Shown here: positions 17,429 through 20,400 of the stretch, one piece after another
Numbering within the stretch: position 1 is the stretch's first letter
How the letters are laid out: each line of letters begins with the position of its first letter
Origin: Lepidodermella squamata
Lineage: Eukaryota > Animalia > Gastrotricha
Direction of reading: 5' to 3'
Length of the DNA: 64,000 nucleotides
Assembly: GCA_047495785.1 (NCBI GenBank)
Contig: JBLDXI010000111.1
Span: forward strand, 1-64,000
Program-made: the position numbers and the translations under genes
The notes under the pieces: model-generated
What the model saw: only the letters and a program-made list of their open reading frames with translations
What the model was told of the DNA's origin: nothing
Databases searched by the model: none

Positions 17429-20400
17429 TTCTTTTTATTGACTGGGCTAGCCGGTTTTTATTTTGCTCTTTACGGCTCCGAGCCGGTTTTCGACTCTGTT
17501 TTTGCTCGGTCGTCAGGGCCTTCTGCTCGGGCGATCGAAGACGTTGTTGATTTTCACGGCACGTATTTATTGCCGAAGCCTTATGCGTCGGTAGTAGTTA
17601 CCGCTCCTAGCGGATCACGGCCGGTTTTTAGCTCTGATTTTTGCCGTTTGCAAAGGCCTTCTGCTTCAGCAGACGTGTTTTTTATGGAATTTCTTTTTGA
17701 TTTTATGTCGAAGCACTCAGCGTCGGCATATGTAGCCGCTCCTAGCGGATTTCCGACCGATCGCGTCGGTGTAGCTGTAGAGTTGTCGAGCGCATCCGAT
17801 TTTGCGATGCCCTTAGACGTCCGCGGCCGCCCCTGCGACTTGTCATTTTTTCCTGAATTTTTGGATAATTTTTGTCCGCTGTCCGCTTTTTCCGGTCAAT
17901 TTTTTCTGACCGTCCTTTCGGACAGGCAGCAGATGTTGTTTTCGTACTACGGTGCTGACGGCGGCACGTGGATGCGTGATAACACTGTTGTTTTTCTCAG
18001 CGGTGCGGCGCTTCACGCGACCGCTGTCGTAACAGCTGGTGTTGTTTTGTTCGAAAAAGCGGTGTTGCTCGTATTGCTAGCATGGCGCACTGTTTGCACT
18101 GGTTATGGAGAATTCCTAATTCTTCAACTTTTGTTTACGCAGGCGGCTGGCTGTTTAGCTTATGGTATTTACTTTGTTGTTTTTGTAAAAGTTGTTAAAA
18201 AATTACAAAAATTTGCTTCTGTTTTTGATACGGATACGAGCAAGCGGCTAGCAGGCGATATCGAGGCGAATGATCGGTGCTGTTTGACTTGTTGTTTGGC
18301 ATGCTGGTTGGCTGATGGTTTTACTTTTATCGCGAAAAGTAAAATTTTTAAAAAATTGAAAAATTTTGTCTTTGTTTTTGAGACGGATACGAGCGAGCGG
18401 TTGGCCAAGGCGAACGAGGCGGTCGATCGAGGCTGCTTGGCTTGTTGTCTGGCTTGCTATCTGGCCGTTGGTTTTGCCTTCATCGCTGAAATTAAAATTT
18501 TTAAAAAATTAAAAAATGTTGCCTTTGTTTTCGACAAGAATGCGAGCGAGCGATTGGCCAAGGCGGACGAGGCGGTCGATGCGGACGTCACGTCGTTCGG
18601 CGGTGACAGCGTTACGCGAACGCCACTCCGATCGGCGGCTGCAACTGCGGTCGACAACGCCCGGGCTGAGGCTGACGTCACGGCTTTCGGCGGTGATAGC
18701 GTATCGAGAACGCCACCCCGACTGCCGGCTGCATTAACGATCGAACCTGAGGCTGATGTCACGGCTTTCGGCGGTGCCAGCGTATCGAGAACGCCACCCC
18801 GACTGCCGGCTGCATTGCTGCGCAAGAATGGACAACGCCCACTTAAAACCGAGTTTTCCTTAACTTTCTTATTAGTTAGCGGGATAGTCGGGATTTATTT
18901 CGGGCTTTGTGGATCCGAATTTGCTTTTGATTTTGCCCGTTCATCAGGGCCTTCTGCTTTGATGAACGGTGACGCTTTTGTTAGATTGCCGTTACTGCCG
19001 AAGCCTTCTGCGGCGGCTCTAGTAGTAACCGCTCCTAGCGGAACTGAAAGTGTTGACTTAGACATCGTTGGCTCGGTGTGTTCGGGACCGTCGTTACTGC
19101 CGAAGCCTTCTGCGGCGACAGTTGTAGTAACCGCTCCTAGCGGAACGCGGTCCGATAGTGTGATAGTTGCTTTTGATTTTGCTCGTTCATCAGGGCCTTC
19201 TGCTTTGATGAACGGTGACGCTTTTGTTAGATTGCCGTTACTGCCGAAGCCTTCTGCGACGGCCCTAGTAGTAACCGCTCCTAGCGGAACTGAAAGTGTT
19301 GACTTAGACATCGTTGGCTCGGTGTGTTCGGGACCGTCGTTACTGCCGAAGCCTTCTGCGGCGGCAGTAGTAGCAACCGCTCCTAGCGGACGATGCATTT
19401 CCCGCGACCTAGCATTTTCTCTTGAATTTCTTTCTATTTTGAGTTGCTGTTACGCCCCGCAGTACAGCGCGGGTATACTTGATAGCGCTGTTAGAGCGAT
19501 TTTGTGGAAGATGGTATGCACTGTTGTTTTCCTCAGCGGGGCGGCGCTTCTCGCGACCGCTGTTGTAAGGATTCGAGTATTGACGGCTGCTTGTGATGTG
19601 GTGTGTGATATGGTCATGTCGCTCGGCCATTTTTGTTTCCTGTTTGTTGTTCACCCAGGTGAACGCGAACTTGTAAAAAATCACGTGAAAAATGACAAAA
19701 ATGATAGCAAAATTGATCTAAGGGATAAAGTCAGGCGTAGCGAGTCCGTAGAAAGGTCGAATTTGTTCGAGGTTCTTCGGTTGCGCGGTGGTGCCGGACG
19801 AGATGAGAACGAAGAGAGACAGAGAGCAGAAGAGGATAGAATTCGAGCAGCATGGGAAGGTGAAGGCGCTGATGAGACTGTCGAGCGGCCGCTAGACCAA
19901 GGTGAAGTCAGGGACATGATTCAAGATTTGACGGCTGGTGAAGACACGCCGATGGATCAAGGTTCGGTGAAAGGCGCGACCAGTGACCGAAAGCGACGTG
20001 CCGGTGATGGCATGTTTGTCAACCTTAGCGAAGCGCCTGACTTTACTGGCATGGAATCCTCGGTTTCCGAGTCAGACATGAAGTCAGCGAAGTTTTTGAA
20101 GACTGATGGTGCGAAACCGGCGGCCGAGAAGAAGACCGTGACGAGGAAGCCGGTGGCGAGAGGAAAAGAGCAGAAGACAGTAGAGGAAGATAGCCGAGGT
20201 AGCCAAGAGGGTCAAGGAGAATTCATTACTGTGACGGCGAAGAATCGTCGACAGCCACCGGTTCAGACGGCGAACCAGGGCGGCGCTAAACCAGGCAACT
20301 GGCGAGGCAAACCGACGATTAATTGGAAGTTGAGCGCGATGGTGGATCGAATCGATGGCCAACGATTCAATAGCGAGTATCTCATGAATCAAGAAGTTCA

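What the first reader, a model, noticed from the sequence alone, without database searches (positions are those of the whole stretch)
19610..19792. Ubiquitin C-terminus (VLRLRGG) and degenerate Ub-like segment inside LINE ORF1: candidate host-DUB-cleaved polyprotein
Seen: ORF1 reads ...RSNLFEVLRLRGG|AGRDENEE... (VLRLRGG at 19772-19792). Ubiquitin ends ESTLHLVLRLRGG, so 9 of 13 residues are identical. By eye the preceding residues also echo ubiquitin: MVMSL-GHFCFLFVVHPGERELVKNHVKNDK against [30 protein letters not shown], with the EGIPPDQQRLIF part missing. The motif sits exactly where the hydrophobic repetitive N-terminal region gives way to the charged, canonical ORF1p (~680 aa; RRM + 3 knuckles). 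Established: deubiquitinases cleave after LRGG in Ub-fusion precursors; cytopathic pestiviruses exploit captured Ub this way; some APE-type non-LTR elements use 2A peptides to split polyproteins. Inference: this element hijacks host DUBs to release mature ORF1p from a membrane-bound leader. I do not know of this architecture in LINE ORF1, but could not search for it.
Basis: partly seen in the sequence, partly recalled or inferred. Interest (0 to 1): 0.9.

Follow-up and report, generated by a model that had tools for sequence, protein, structure and literature searches.

The report
Ubiquitin-tail signal in LINE ORF1
A jumping gene sitting in a spliced-leader RNA gene of the ribosomal DNA spacer keeps the last eleven residues of ubiquitin between a long, poorly conserved leader and its normal RNA-binding protein, and because distant relatives keep the same peptide it is a selected signal, most likely a site where host ubiquitin proteases cut the leader off.

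Summary
The motif is real. VLRLRGG lies at 19772-19792, and NLFEVLRLRGG matches 9 of the last 13 ubiquitin residues.

It is not chance:
- Its DNA is identical in about 38 copies in this genome.
- A second, distant ORF1 family here encodes it with other codons.
- Five metagenomic ORF1 relatives (22-27% identity) carry L..VLRLRGG before the RNA-binding core, with freely varying codons.
- The next residue is A, G, S or M, never P.

The leader is translated. About 900 codons stay open in all full-length copies, against 59-71 stops in the other + frames. The frame starts at the first AUG of a transcript headed by the spliced-leader exon.

The claimed degenerate ubiquitin body is not supported: no Pfam or PDB match, shuffle p=0.44, and a low-confidence all-helical model. 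Only one relative (P0011) faintly keeps ubiquitin 34-56.

No protease domain or 2A motif was found in the element. Cleavage after GG by host ubiquitin proteases is therefore the best inference (about 0.55), but it is untested, and known enzymes cut tail-only substrates poorly.

The window copy is 5'-truncated and has a stop in ORF2.

This scan reached the same reading on other pieces of this genome (s1-373970, s1-368361). I found no paper describing it.

The parts
17376..17413 (+). Spliced-leader (SL) exon of a small RNA gene in the rDNA spacer. This gene is the target of the element. The exon ends ...TTTTCTGAG and is followed by the donor GTTAGT.
   Evidence: in cDNA-type run X1, SMART-oligo loose ends lie before 17376/17381, several different continuations follow 17413, and summed depth is about 1e5 in this bin only. 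Sequence.
17415..17426 (+). Target-site duplication TTAGTATCATCA, left copy. The right copy is at 24930-24941.
   Evidence: spacer positions 1110-1121 are present on both sides.
17427..24929 (+). One copy of an APE-type LINE. It lacks about 455 bp at the 5' end relative to full-length siblings and has a poly(A) tail at 24920-24929.
   Evidence: 3' junction always at spacer position 1110 or 1103; 5' junctions vary.
17427..19759 (+). Leader part of ORF1: hydrophobic, internally repeated, weakly constrained. It is 888 residues before the tail in full-length copies.
   Evidence: 0 stops in 931 codons against 59 and 71 in the other + frames; dN/dS 0.41-1.0; tandem repeats; hydropathy; no family match.
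19760..19792 (+). Ubiquitin beta5-plus-tail peptide NLFEVLRLRGG. The proposed cut is after 19792, giving an N-terminus AGRDENEE...
19793..21832 (+). Canonical ORF1p (679 aa plus stop): acidic/basic linker, conserved RNA-binding core at about 20189-20779, three Cys/His knuckles at 20870-21100, and a C-terminal helical part.
   Evidence: relatives match only this part; invariant C/H columns; nearest Atlas clusters are CCHC-type LINE ORF1-like proteins.
21817..24603 (+). ORF2: APE endonuclease and reverse transcriptase. In this copy it is broken by an in-frame stop at 23065-23067.
   Evidence: PF03372/PF14529, PF00078; siblings have one open frame of 932-939 aa.

Best explanation
The element is an APE-type LINE that inserts 1-2 nt behind the exon of a spliced-leader RNA gene in the rDNA spacer. 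Its RNA starts at that gene's transcription start.

The first AUG, 170 nt downstream, opens a 1585-aa ORF1. This ORF1 has three parts: an approximately 890-residue hydrophobic, repetitive, weakly constrained leader; the last eleven residues of ubiquitin (beta5 strand plus tail, [N/S/D]L..VLRLRGG); and a canonical ORF1p (RNA-binding core plus three knuckles).

The tail peptide is a strictly selected protein signal. Most likely it is an endoproteolytic processing site. Host ubiquitin-specific proteases, which this organism must have to cut its own head-to-tail polyubiquitin, would cleave after GG. That would free an ORF1p of normal size, with a small N-terminal residue, from whatever was translated upstream.

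Functionally this would do for ORF1 what 2A does for ORF2 in other LINEs.

Shown: the anatomy, conservation, translation of the motif, and absence of a protease domain in the element. Inferred: the cleavage and the enzyme.
For: 1. Conservation. The L..VLRLRGG columns are invariant among six ORF1 proteins of 22-27% identity. No other run of invariant columns in the alignment is as long, the zinc-knuckle Cys/His included. The codons differ at most synonymous sites.
2. Second family. A second ORF1 family in this genome (C15, C51, C116) encodes the motif with CGC CTA CGA, about 96 nt upstream of its core match.
3. Copies. About 38 copies of the window family carry it unchanged.
4. Spread. The motif occurs in at least four lineages of the ORF1 tree.
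5. Leaders. Upstream leaders vary from 12 to about 900 residues and share no sequence.
6. Residue after GG. It is A, G, S, S, A, M and never P. This fits the known rule for ubiquitin-fusion cleavage (established knowledge).
7. Product size. Projecting the match coordinates, relatives without the motif start roughly 30 residues before to 55 residues after the GG position, so the predicted product has the normal ORF1p size.
8. Leader is translated. There are 0 stops in 931 codons against 59 and 71. Frames of 1601-1921 aa stay open in other subfamilies. The start is the first AUG after the SL-gene start. A 1581-nt contig of run X1 bridges 19507-21084.
9. Local constraint. dN/dS is 0.06-0.13 around the motif, 0.4-1.0 in the leader and 0.22-0.35 in the core.
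10. No own cleavage device. No protease domain and no 2A motif were found in ORF1 or ORF2.
11. Host activity. The host has head-to-tail polyubiquitin genes, so it must have LRLRGG-cutting activity.
12. Ubiquitin origin. Relative P0011 aligns colinearly with ubiquitin 32-77 (shuffle p=0.045 for the body alone).
Against: - No cleavage data exist.
- Known UCH and USP enzymes recognise the folded ubiquitin body and hydrolyse tail-only substrates such as Z-LRGG-AMC orders of magnitude more slowly than Ub-AMC (my own knowledge, not checked here). This element has no detectable ubiquitin body, and P0012 has only 12 residues before the motif.
- The closest core relatives, P0001 and P0002, lack the motif, so it is dispensable for some elements.
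- Runs X1 and X2 are held only as contigs, and X1's RNA nature is a guess supported by SMART-oligo ends. Expression of the leader is therefore not proven.
Confidence: 0.55

Rival explanations
1. The tail is an uncleaved docking peptide. It would bind a host factor that recognises the ubiquitin tail or beta5 region, for example a DUB, E1 or another tail-binding module. That could recruit or distract the factor, or control ORF1p stability or localisation.
For: Strict conservation of 8 residues without a ubiquitin body fits a linear motif. Conservation extends to L at -10 and to N/S/D at -11, which is further than most proteases read.
Against: An internal LRLRGG lacks the free carboxylate that known tail readers such as ZnF-UBP need (own knowledge). 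The position is always N-terminal to the core, behind a variable leader. The small, non-proline residue after GG is what a cleavage site predicts.
Confidence: 0.2
2. The site is cut, but by a non-DUB enzyme or by an LXGG-specific papain-like protease supplied in trans by another element or virus.
For: Viral papain-like and OTU proteases cut LXGG peptides without needing a ubiquitin fold (papers listed, such as PMC8348309). Some LINEs (NeSL, Utopia) carry a protease domain (PMC4640811).
Against: No protease domain was found in this element. Relatives come from different samples, where a common trans-acting protease is unlikely. The full VLRLRGG is kept, not just LXGG.
Confidence: 0.12
3. The motif is a neutral relic of an old ubiquitin capture, or a chance match.
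For: P0011 suggests an ancestral captured ubiquitin. Some relatives have lost the motif.
Against: A relic would decay like the ubiquitin body did. Instead the 7-8 residues are invariant across 22-27% identity with varied codons. By my rough estimate the chance of the exact heptapeptide is about 1e-5 per 500-aa protein, yet 5 of 61 hits have it.
Confidence: 0.03
4. Translation starts downstream (Met at 19916 or later), or the leader is removed as an outron by SL trans-splicing, so the motif is never made.
For: The host trans-splices. In-frame Met codons lie 46-60 codons after the motif.
Against: Amino-acid conservation with synonymous change shows the motif is translated. The leader frame is kept open. 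The Met positions are not conserved among subfamilies. No SL-to-internal joint was listed, which is weak evidence because only contigs were available.
Confidence: 0.03

Closest known systems
Natural ubiquitin fusion precursors (polyubiquitin, Ub-eL40, Ub-eS31) and cytopathogenic pestiviruses with a captured ubiquitin insert
   Same: LRLRGG followed by a non-proline residue. The downstream protein is released by cellular ubiquitin hydrolases. The pestivirus case shows that a mobile genome can exploit this route (own knowledge, not checked in a paper here).
   Different: Those carry a complete, folded 76-residue ubiquitin. Here only about 11 residues remain, and the upstream part is an unrelated leader of 12 to about 900 residues.
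2A (StopGo) peptides in the N-terminal region of APE-type LINE proteins (PMC3708506, PMC3894237)
   Same: A short conserved peptide near the N-terminus of a LINE protein separates an upstream piece from the functional protein. It occurs patchily across clades.
   Different: 2A acts on the ribosome, has the motif D(V/I)ExNPGP, and is nearly always in ORF2. Here no NPGP is present, the peptide is the ubiquitin tail, it lies in ORF1, and it would need a protease.
Viral LXGG polyprotein sites cut by the virus's own papain-like or OTU protease/deubiquitinase (for example marafivirus, PMC8348309)
   Same: A ubiquitin-tail-like cleavage site sits inside a polyprotein.
   Different: Those genomes encode the protease. 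This element has none detectable.
SL-gene-targeting LINEs NeSL, CRE, SLACS and CZAR (named in PMC4640811 as SL-exon-specific; NeSL has a protease domain)
   Same: It inserts in a spliced-leader RNA gene and depends on a multicopy small-RNA gene.
   Different: Those use a restriction-like endonuclease (RLE) and hit the exon. This one has an APE endonuclease and nicks 1-2 nt behind the exon.

Membership tests
Ubiquitin / ubiquitin-like domain (Pfam PF00240, beta-grasp) | Beta-grasp body of about 70 residues detectable by profile or fold | tested here: not met
   No Pfam match at E<=10. No PDB ubiquitin match at E<=10. Shuffle p=0.44. AF2 model is all-helical at pLDDT 62 (low confidence).
Ubiquitin / ubiquitin-like domain (Pfam PF00240, beta-grasp) | C-terminal tail LRLRGG | tested here: met
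   VLRLRGG at 19772-19792. It is identical to the host ubiquitin tail.
Ubiquitin-fusion precursor processed by host DUBs | GG followed by a non-proline residue, with a separate functional protein downstream | tested here: met
   The residue after GG is A, G, S, S, A, M in six proteins. The downstream part equals a full ORF1p.
Ubiquitin-fusion precursor processed by host DUBs | Actual GG-dependent cleavage | not testable with these tools
   Needs expression or proteomics.
APE-type non-LTR retrotransposon with RRM-plus-CCHC ORF1 | APE endonuclease and reverse transcriptase in ORF2 | tested here: met
   PF03372/PF14529 and PF00078.
APE-type non-LTR retrotransposon with RRM-plus-CCHC ORF1 | Poly(A) tail, target-site duplication, 5' truncation | tested here: met
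   A10 at 24920-24929 and a 12-bp duplication. Variable 5' ends among copies.
APE-type non-LTR retrotransposon with RRM-plus-CCHC ORF1 | ORF1 with three Cys/His knuckles after an RNA-binding core | tested here: met
   Invariant C/H columns. The Pfam zf-CCHC model itself is not matched. The RRM fold was not tested.
2A-containing LINEs | D(V/I)ExNPGP motif | tested here: not met
   No NPG anywhere in the 1585-aa ORF1.
NeSL/CRE-type SL-specific LINEs | Restriction-like endonuclease and insertion within the SL exon | tested here: not met
   The endonuclease is APE. The nick lies 1-2 nt after the exon.
Polyproteins with an own LXGG protease | Papain-like, OTU or Ulp protease domain in the element | tested here: not met
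   No such Pfam match in the leader, ORF1p or ORF2 at E<=1. A very divergent protease cannot be excluded.

The most novel reading that the evidence does not exclude
A widespread but patchy lineage of LINEs uses a body-less ubiquitin tail as a portable, host-operated cleavage module. The module would give ORF1p a defined N-terminus whatever is translated upstream. This is useful for elements that ride on host promoters, as this one rides on a spliced-leader gene. If true, cellular ubiquitin proteases process tail-only substrates in vivo, and LINEs have a second solution besides 2A for making two proteins from one frame.
Probability: 0.5. Interest if true: 0.8.

Novelty: new variant of a known kind. 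Interest (0 to 1): 0.72.

Why it matters
LINE ORF1 biogenesis is usually thought of as simple translation of one protein. A conserved ubiquitin-tail site would add host-protease processing to the LINE life cycle.

It would explain how elements tolerate long, fast-changing N-terminal leaders. It would also offer an 11-residue natural test case for what ubiquitin proteases need in order to recognise a substrate.

The idea is directly testable with a reporter carrying the wild-type or GG-mutant site. It also gives a simple sequence handle, [NSD]L..VLRLRGG before an ORF1 core, for finding more such elements.

Tried and rejected
- **The search for homologous proteins, two searches.** Queries were alignments with and without the motif. 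Both returned nothing, because the 8000 candidates chosen by shared words did not include relatives. This says nothing about absence.
- **Fetching more of the genome.** That family's leader is therefore only bounded, at roughly 170 residues or fewer, from its 735-aa open frame. No complex prediction was attempted.
- **Ubiquitin-domain open frames in the genome.** I suspected the C74 cluster and C55 might be LINE ORF1s with an intact ubiquitin. The two loci I read (one in C74, the one in C55) hold host genes, namely multi-UBL proteins and a large host protein ending in a ubiquitin, so I rejected this.
- **AF2 of the P0011 leader.** pLDDT was 44, which is uninformative.
- **AF2 of the window segment.** Low confidence, so no fold search was run.
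- **Atlas search of the leader.** No usable hit, and the recognition score (844) is in the range typical of shuffled or reversed sequences.
- **Literature searches.** I searched LRLRGG or RLRGG with retrotransposon or transposable element, ORF1 with ubiquitin-like, and reviews of ORF1 domains and of 2A in LINEs. None mentions a ubiquitin tail in a LINE.
- **Read laying.** Only contigs were available, so transcript ends, strand and expression level are not shown.

Full report
**1. Setting**

The window is an rDNA array. 18S, 5.8S and 28S lie on the minus strand and 5S on the plus strand, in units of about 8.46 kb.

I compared an empty spacer (7847-9998) with the rest of the window. This shows a 7503-bp insertion at 17427-24929, flanked by a 12-bp target duplication and ending in A10.

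ORF2 carries APE endonuclease and reverse transcriptase domains. In this copy it is broken by one in-frame stop at 23065-23067, whereas siblings have one open frame of 932-939 aa.

The genome (121 Mb, 151 contigs) holds many copies at 92-99% identity.
- All copies examined lie in the same spacer.
- The 3' junction is always at spacer position 1110 (or 1103).
- The 5' junctions vary.
- Most full-length copies extend about 455 bp further 5' than the window copy, so the window copy is 5'-truncated.

**2. The target is a spliced-leader RNA gene**

Evidence from run X1:
- SMART-type oligo sequences abut 17376 and 17381.
- The bin holding this site (17334-17500) has a summed depth near 1e5, against tens on either side.
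- Contigs that reach 17413 continue into several different sequences.
- The genome continues with GTTAGT.

This is the signature of an SL exon (about 17376-17413, ending CTGAG) spliced onto many mRNAs. The element's duplication starts at 17415, so the nick lies 1-2 nt behind the exon.

In copy L008 the intact target SL exon is followed by a second, nearly complete SL exon plus about 20 nt of intron, joined to the element's 5' end. In L002-L004 the same 60-63 bp piece (spacer positions 1075-1137) precedes the element behind unrelated flanks. The template RNA therefore began at the SL gene's start.

In full-length copies the first AUG after that start is at +170, in the context AAAATGT. It opens the long ORF1.

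Earlier notes of this scan (s1-430869, s1-422642) describe the same target. I reached it independently and then found they agree.

**3. The observation**

VLRLRGG is at 19772-19792, and NLFEVLRLRGG is at 19760-19792. The host ubiquitin, read from its polyubiquitin gene, ends ESTLHLVLRLRGG.

**4. Is the leader translated?**

In a full-length copy, the 931 codons before the motif contain no stop. The other two plus-strand frames of the same DNA have 59 and 71 stops.

Every full-length copy keeps 914-941 open codons upstream. Further subfamilies have open frames of 1601-1921 aa.

| Segment | dN/dS between subfamilies |
|---|---|
| Leader | 0.41-1.0 |
| 67 codons ending with the motif | 0.06-0.13 |
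| Rest of ORF1 | 0.22-0.35 |

The leader has several hydrophobic 19-residue windows and tandem repeats. It matches no Pfam family, and its protein-language-model recognition score (844) is in the range typical of shuffled or reversed sequences.

My reading is that the frame must stay open because ribosomes start at the first AUG, while the leader's sequence matters little. A membrane role is possible but rests on hydropathy alone.

**5. Is the motif selected?**

Within the genome, the 21 nt are identical in about 38 copies.

A second, distant ORF1 family (C15:3236602, C51:184938, C116:24841) encodes VLRLRGG with other codons: CGC CTA CGA instead of CGG TTG CGC. The motif there lies about 96 nt upstream of its ORF1-core match (E 3.5e-85, open frame 735 aa).

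An exhaustive HMMER search of 1.84 billion representative proteins found 61 relatives, all matching only the core. Five of the best 15 carry exactly VLRLRGG N-terminal to the core:

| Relative | Sequence around the motif |
|---|---|
| P0007 | SLDDVLRLRGGAP |
| P0009 | NLLEVLRLRGGGG |
| P0011 | NLHLVLRLRGGSK |
| P0012 | NLHHVLRLRGGSG |
| P0015 | DLNDVLRLRGGMQ |

- In the alignment of these five with the window protein (22-27% identity), L..VLRLRGG is invariant. No other run of invariant columns in that alignment is as long.
- Their codons differ at most synonymous positions.
- Called genes or reading frames follow ORF1 on their contigs, except L033. P0012's is shown to carry APE and RT domains.
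- Their leaders are 12 to about 150 residues and unrelated to each other. Stops close the frames just upstream, except in P0007, where the frame stays open 147 codons before the called start, and P0012, whose DNA could not be read.
- The residue after GG is A, G, S, S, A or M.
- On a maximum-likelihood tree of the core, motif-bearers fall in at least four places. The window element groups with P0001 and P0002, which lack the motif. The motif is therefore old and has been lost or exchanged repeatedly.
- Motif-less relatives begin roughly 30 residues before to 55 residues after the GG position when projected on the window protein (from the coordinates). The piece after GG is thus a normal-sized ORF1p.

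**6. Is there a ubiquitin body?**

Not in this element. See the observation check.

One relative, P0011, aligns colinearly with ubiquitin 32-77, including G-x-x-PD-x-x-R and DG-x-x-L.
- E is about 0.5-1 against mono-ubiquitin chains. Lower values against polyubiquitin are inflated by repeats.
- The shuffle test for the body alone gives p=0.045.
- Its AF2 model is uninformative.

This faintly supports an origin by capture of ubiquitin, followed by decay of everything except beta5 and the tail.

**7. Mechanism**

The element has no protease domain and no 2A motif. The host has head-to-tail polyubiquitin genes, so it must cut LRLRGG-X bonds.

The simplest account is host DUB cleavage after GG. 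It fits the position before the core, the variable leader, the invariant tail, the small non-proline residue after GG, and the normal-sized product.

The main difficulty is that well-studied DUBs rely on the ubiquitin body and cut tail-only substrates poorly (my own knowledge). Cleavage may therefore be slow or partial, or done by an enzyme with unusual specificity. Alternatively the peptide may be a docking motif rather than a cut site. I put host-DUB cleavage at about 0.55.

**8. Novelty**

Searches of the held literature found no description of a ubiquitin tail in a LINE protein.

The closest known things are ubiquitin-fusion processing (including captured ubiquitin in pestiviruses), 2A in LINEs, and viral LXGG sites.

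This scan had already reached the same reading on other pieces of the same genome (s1-373970, s1-368361). My results agree and were obtained independently before I read those notes.

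Noticed in passing
window 17376-17413 (the same sequence at 8922-8959 in the empty unit): A spliced-leader RNA gene lies in the rDNA spacer, upstream of 5S on the same strand. 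The exon ends CTGAG|GTTAGT. Depth in cDNA-type run X1 is very high, and many different sequences are joined after 17413.
   Followed up: partly
L008:930-1045; L002, L003, L004 5' junctions: The inserted element carries its own near-complete copy of the SL exon plus about 20 nt of intron at its 5' end. The LINE RNA is therefore made from the SL gene's start and mimics a trans-spliced mRNA. Some copies have target duplications of several hundred bp (spacer 1110 to 1556 or 2067).
   Followed up: partly
L013:1149-1210 and window 19787-19807: The hexapeptide GAGRDE occurs twice with different codons. One copy follows the initiator region (MLMFSAVGAGRDE) and the other follows the motif (RGGAGRDE). 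This could be chance, an old duplication, or a shared N-terminal feature.
   Followed up: no
window 17427-19600 against 19800-21800: Synonymous divergence between subfamilies is much lower in the leader (dS 0.02-0.08) than in the ORF1 core (0.12-0.29). This hints at nucleotide-level constraint or at recombination between subfamilies in the leader.
   Followed up: no
window 56813-57869: A roughly 1.06-kb insertion in another spacer unit has CAGTG...CACTG termini and an 8-bp duplication GGTTAATC, so it looks like a hAT-type MITE. It has no similarity to the LINE.
   Followed up: partly
L045:3223-5718 (-) and L044; G000 C74:192000-376000: One host gene encodes a large protein ending in a complete ubiquitin with LRLRGG followed by more residues. 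C74 holds a cluster of many ubiquitin-domain matches; the two long open frames I read there (555 and 481 aa) each hold several ubiquitin-like repeats and end ...RLRGC or ...RMAGC.
   Followed up: no
window 23065-23067: There is an in-frame stop in ORF2 of the window copy. Together with the 5' truncation, this copy is defective. Several siblings have both frames open.
   Followed up: yes
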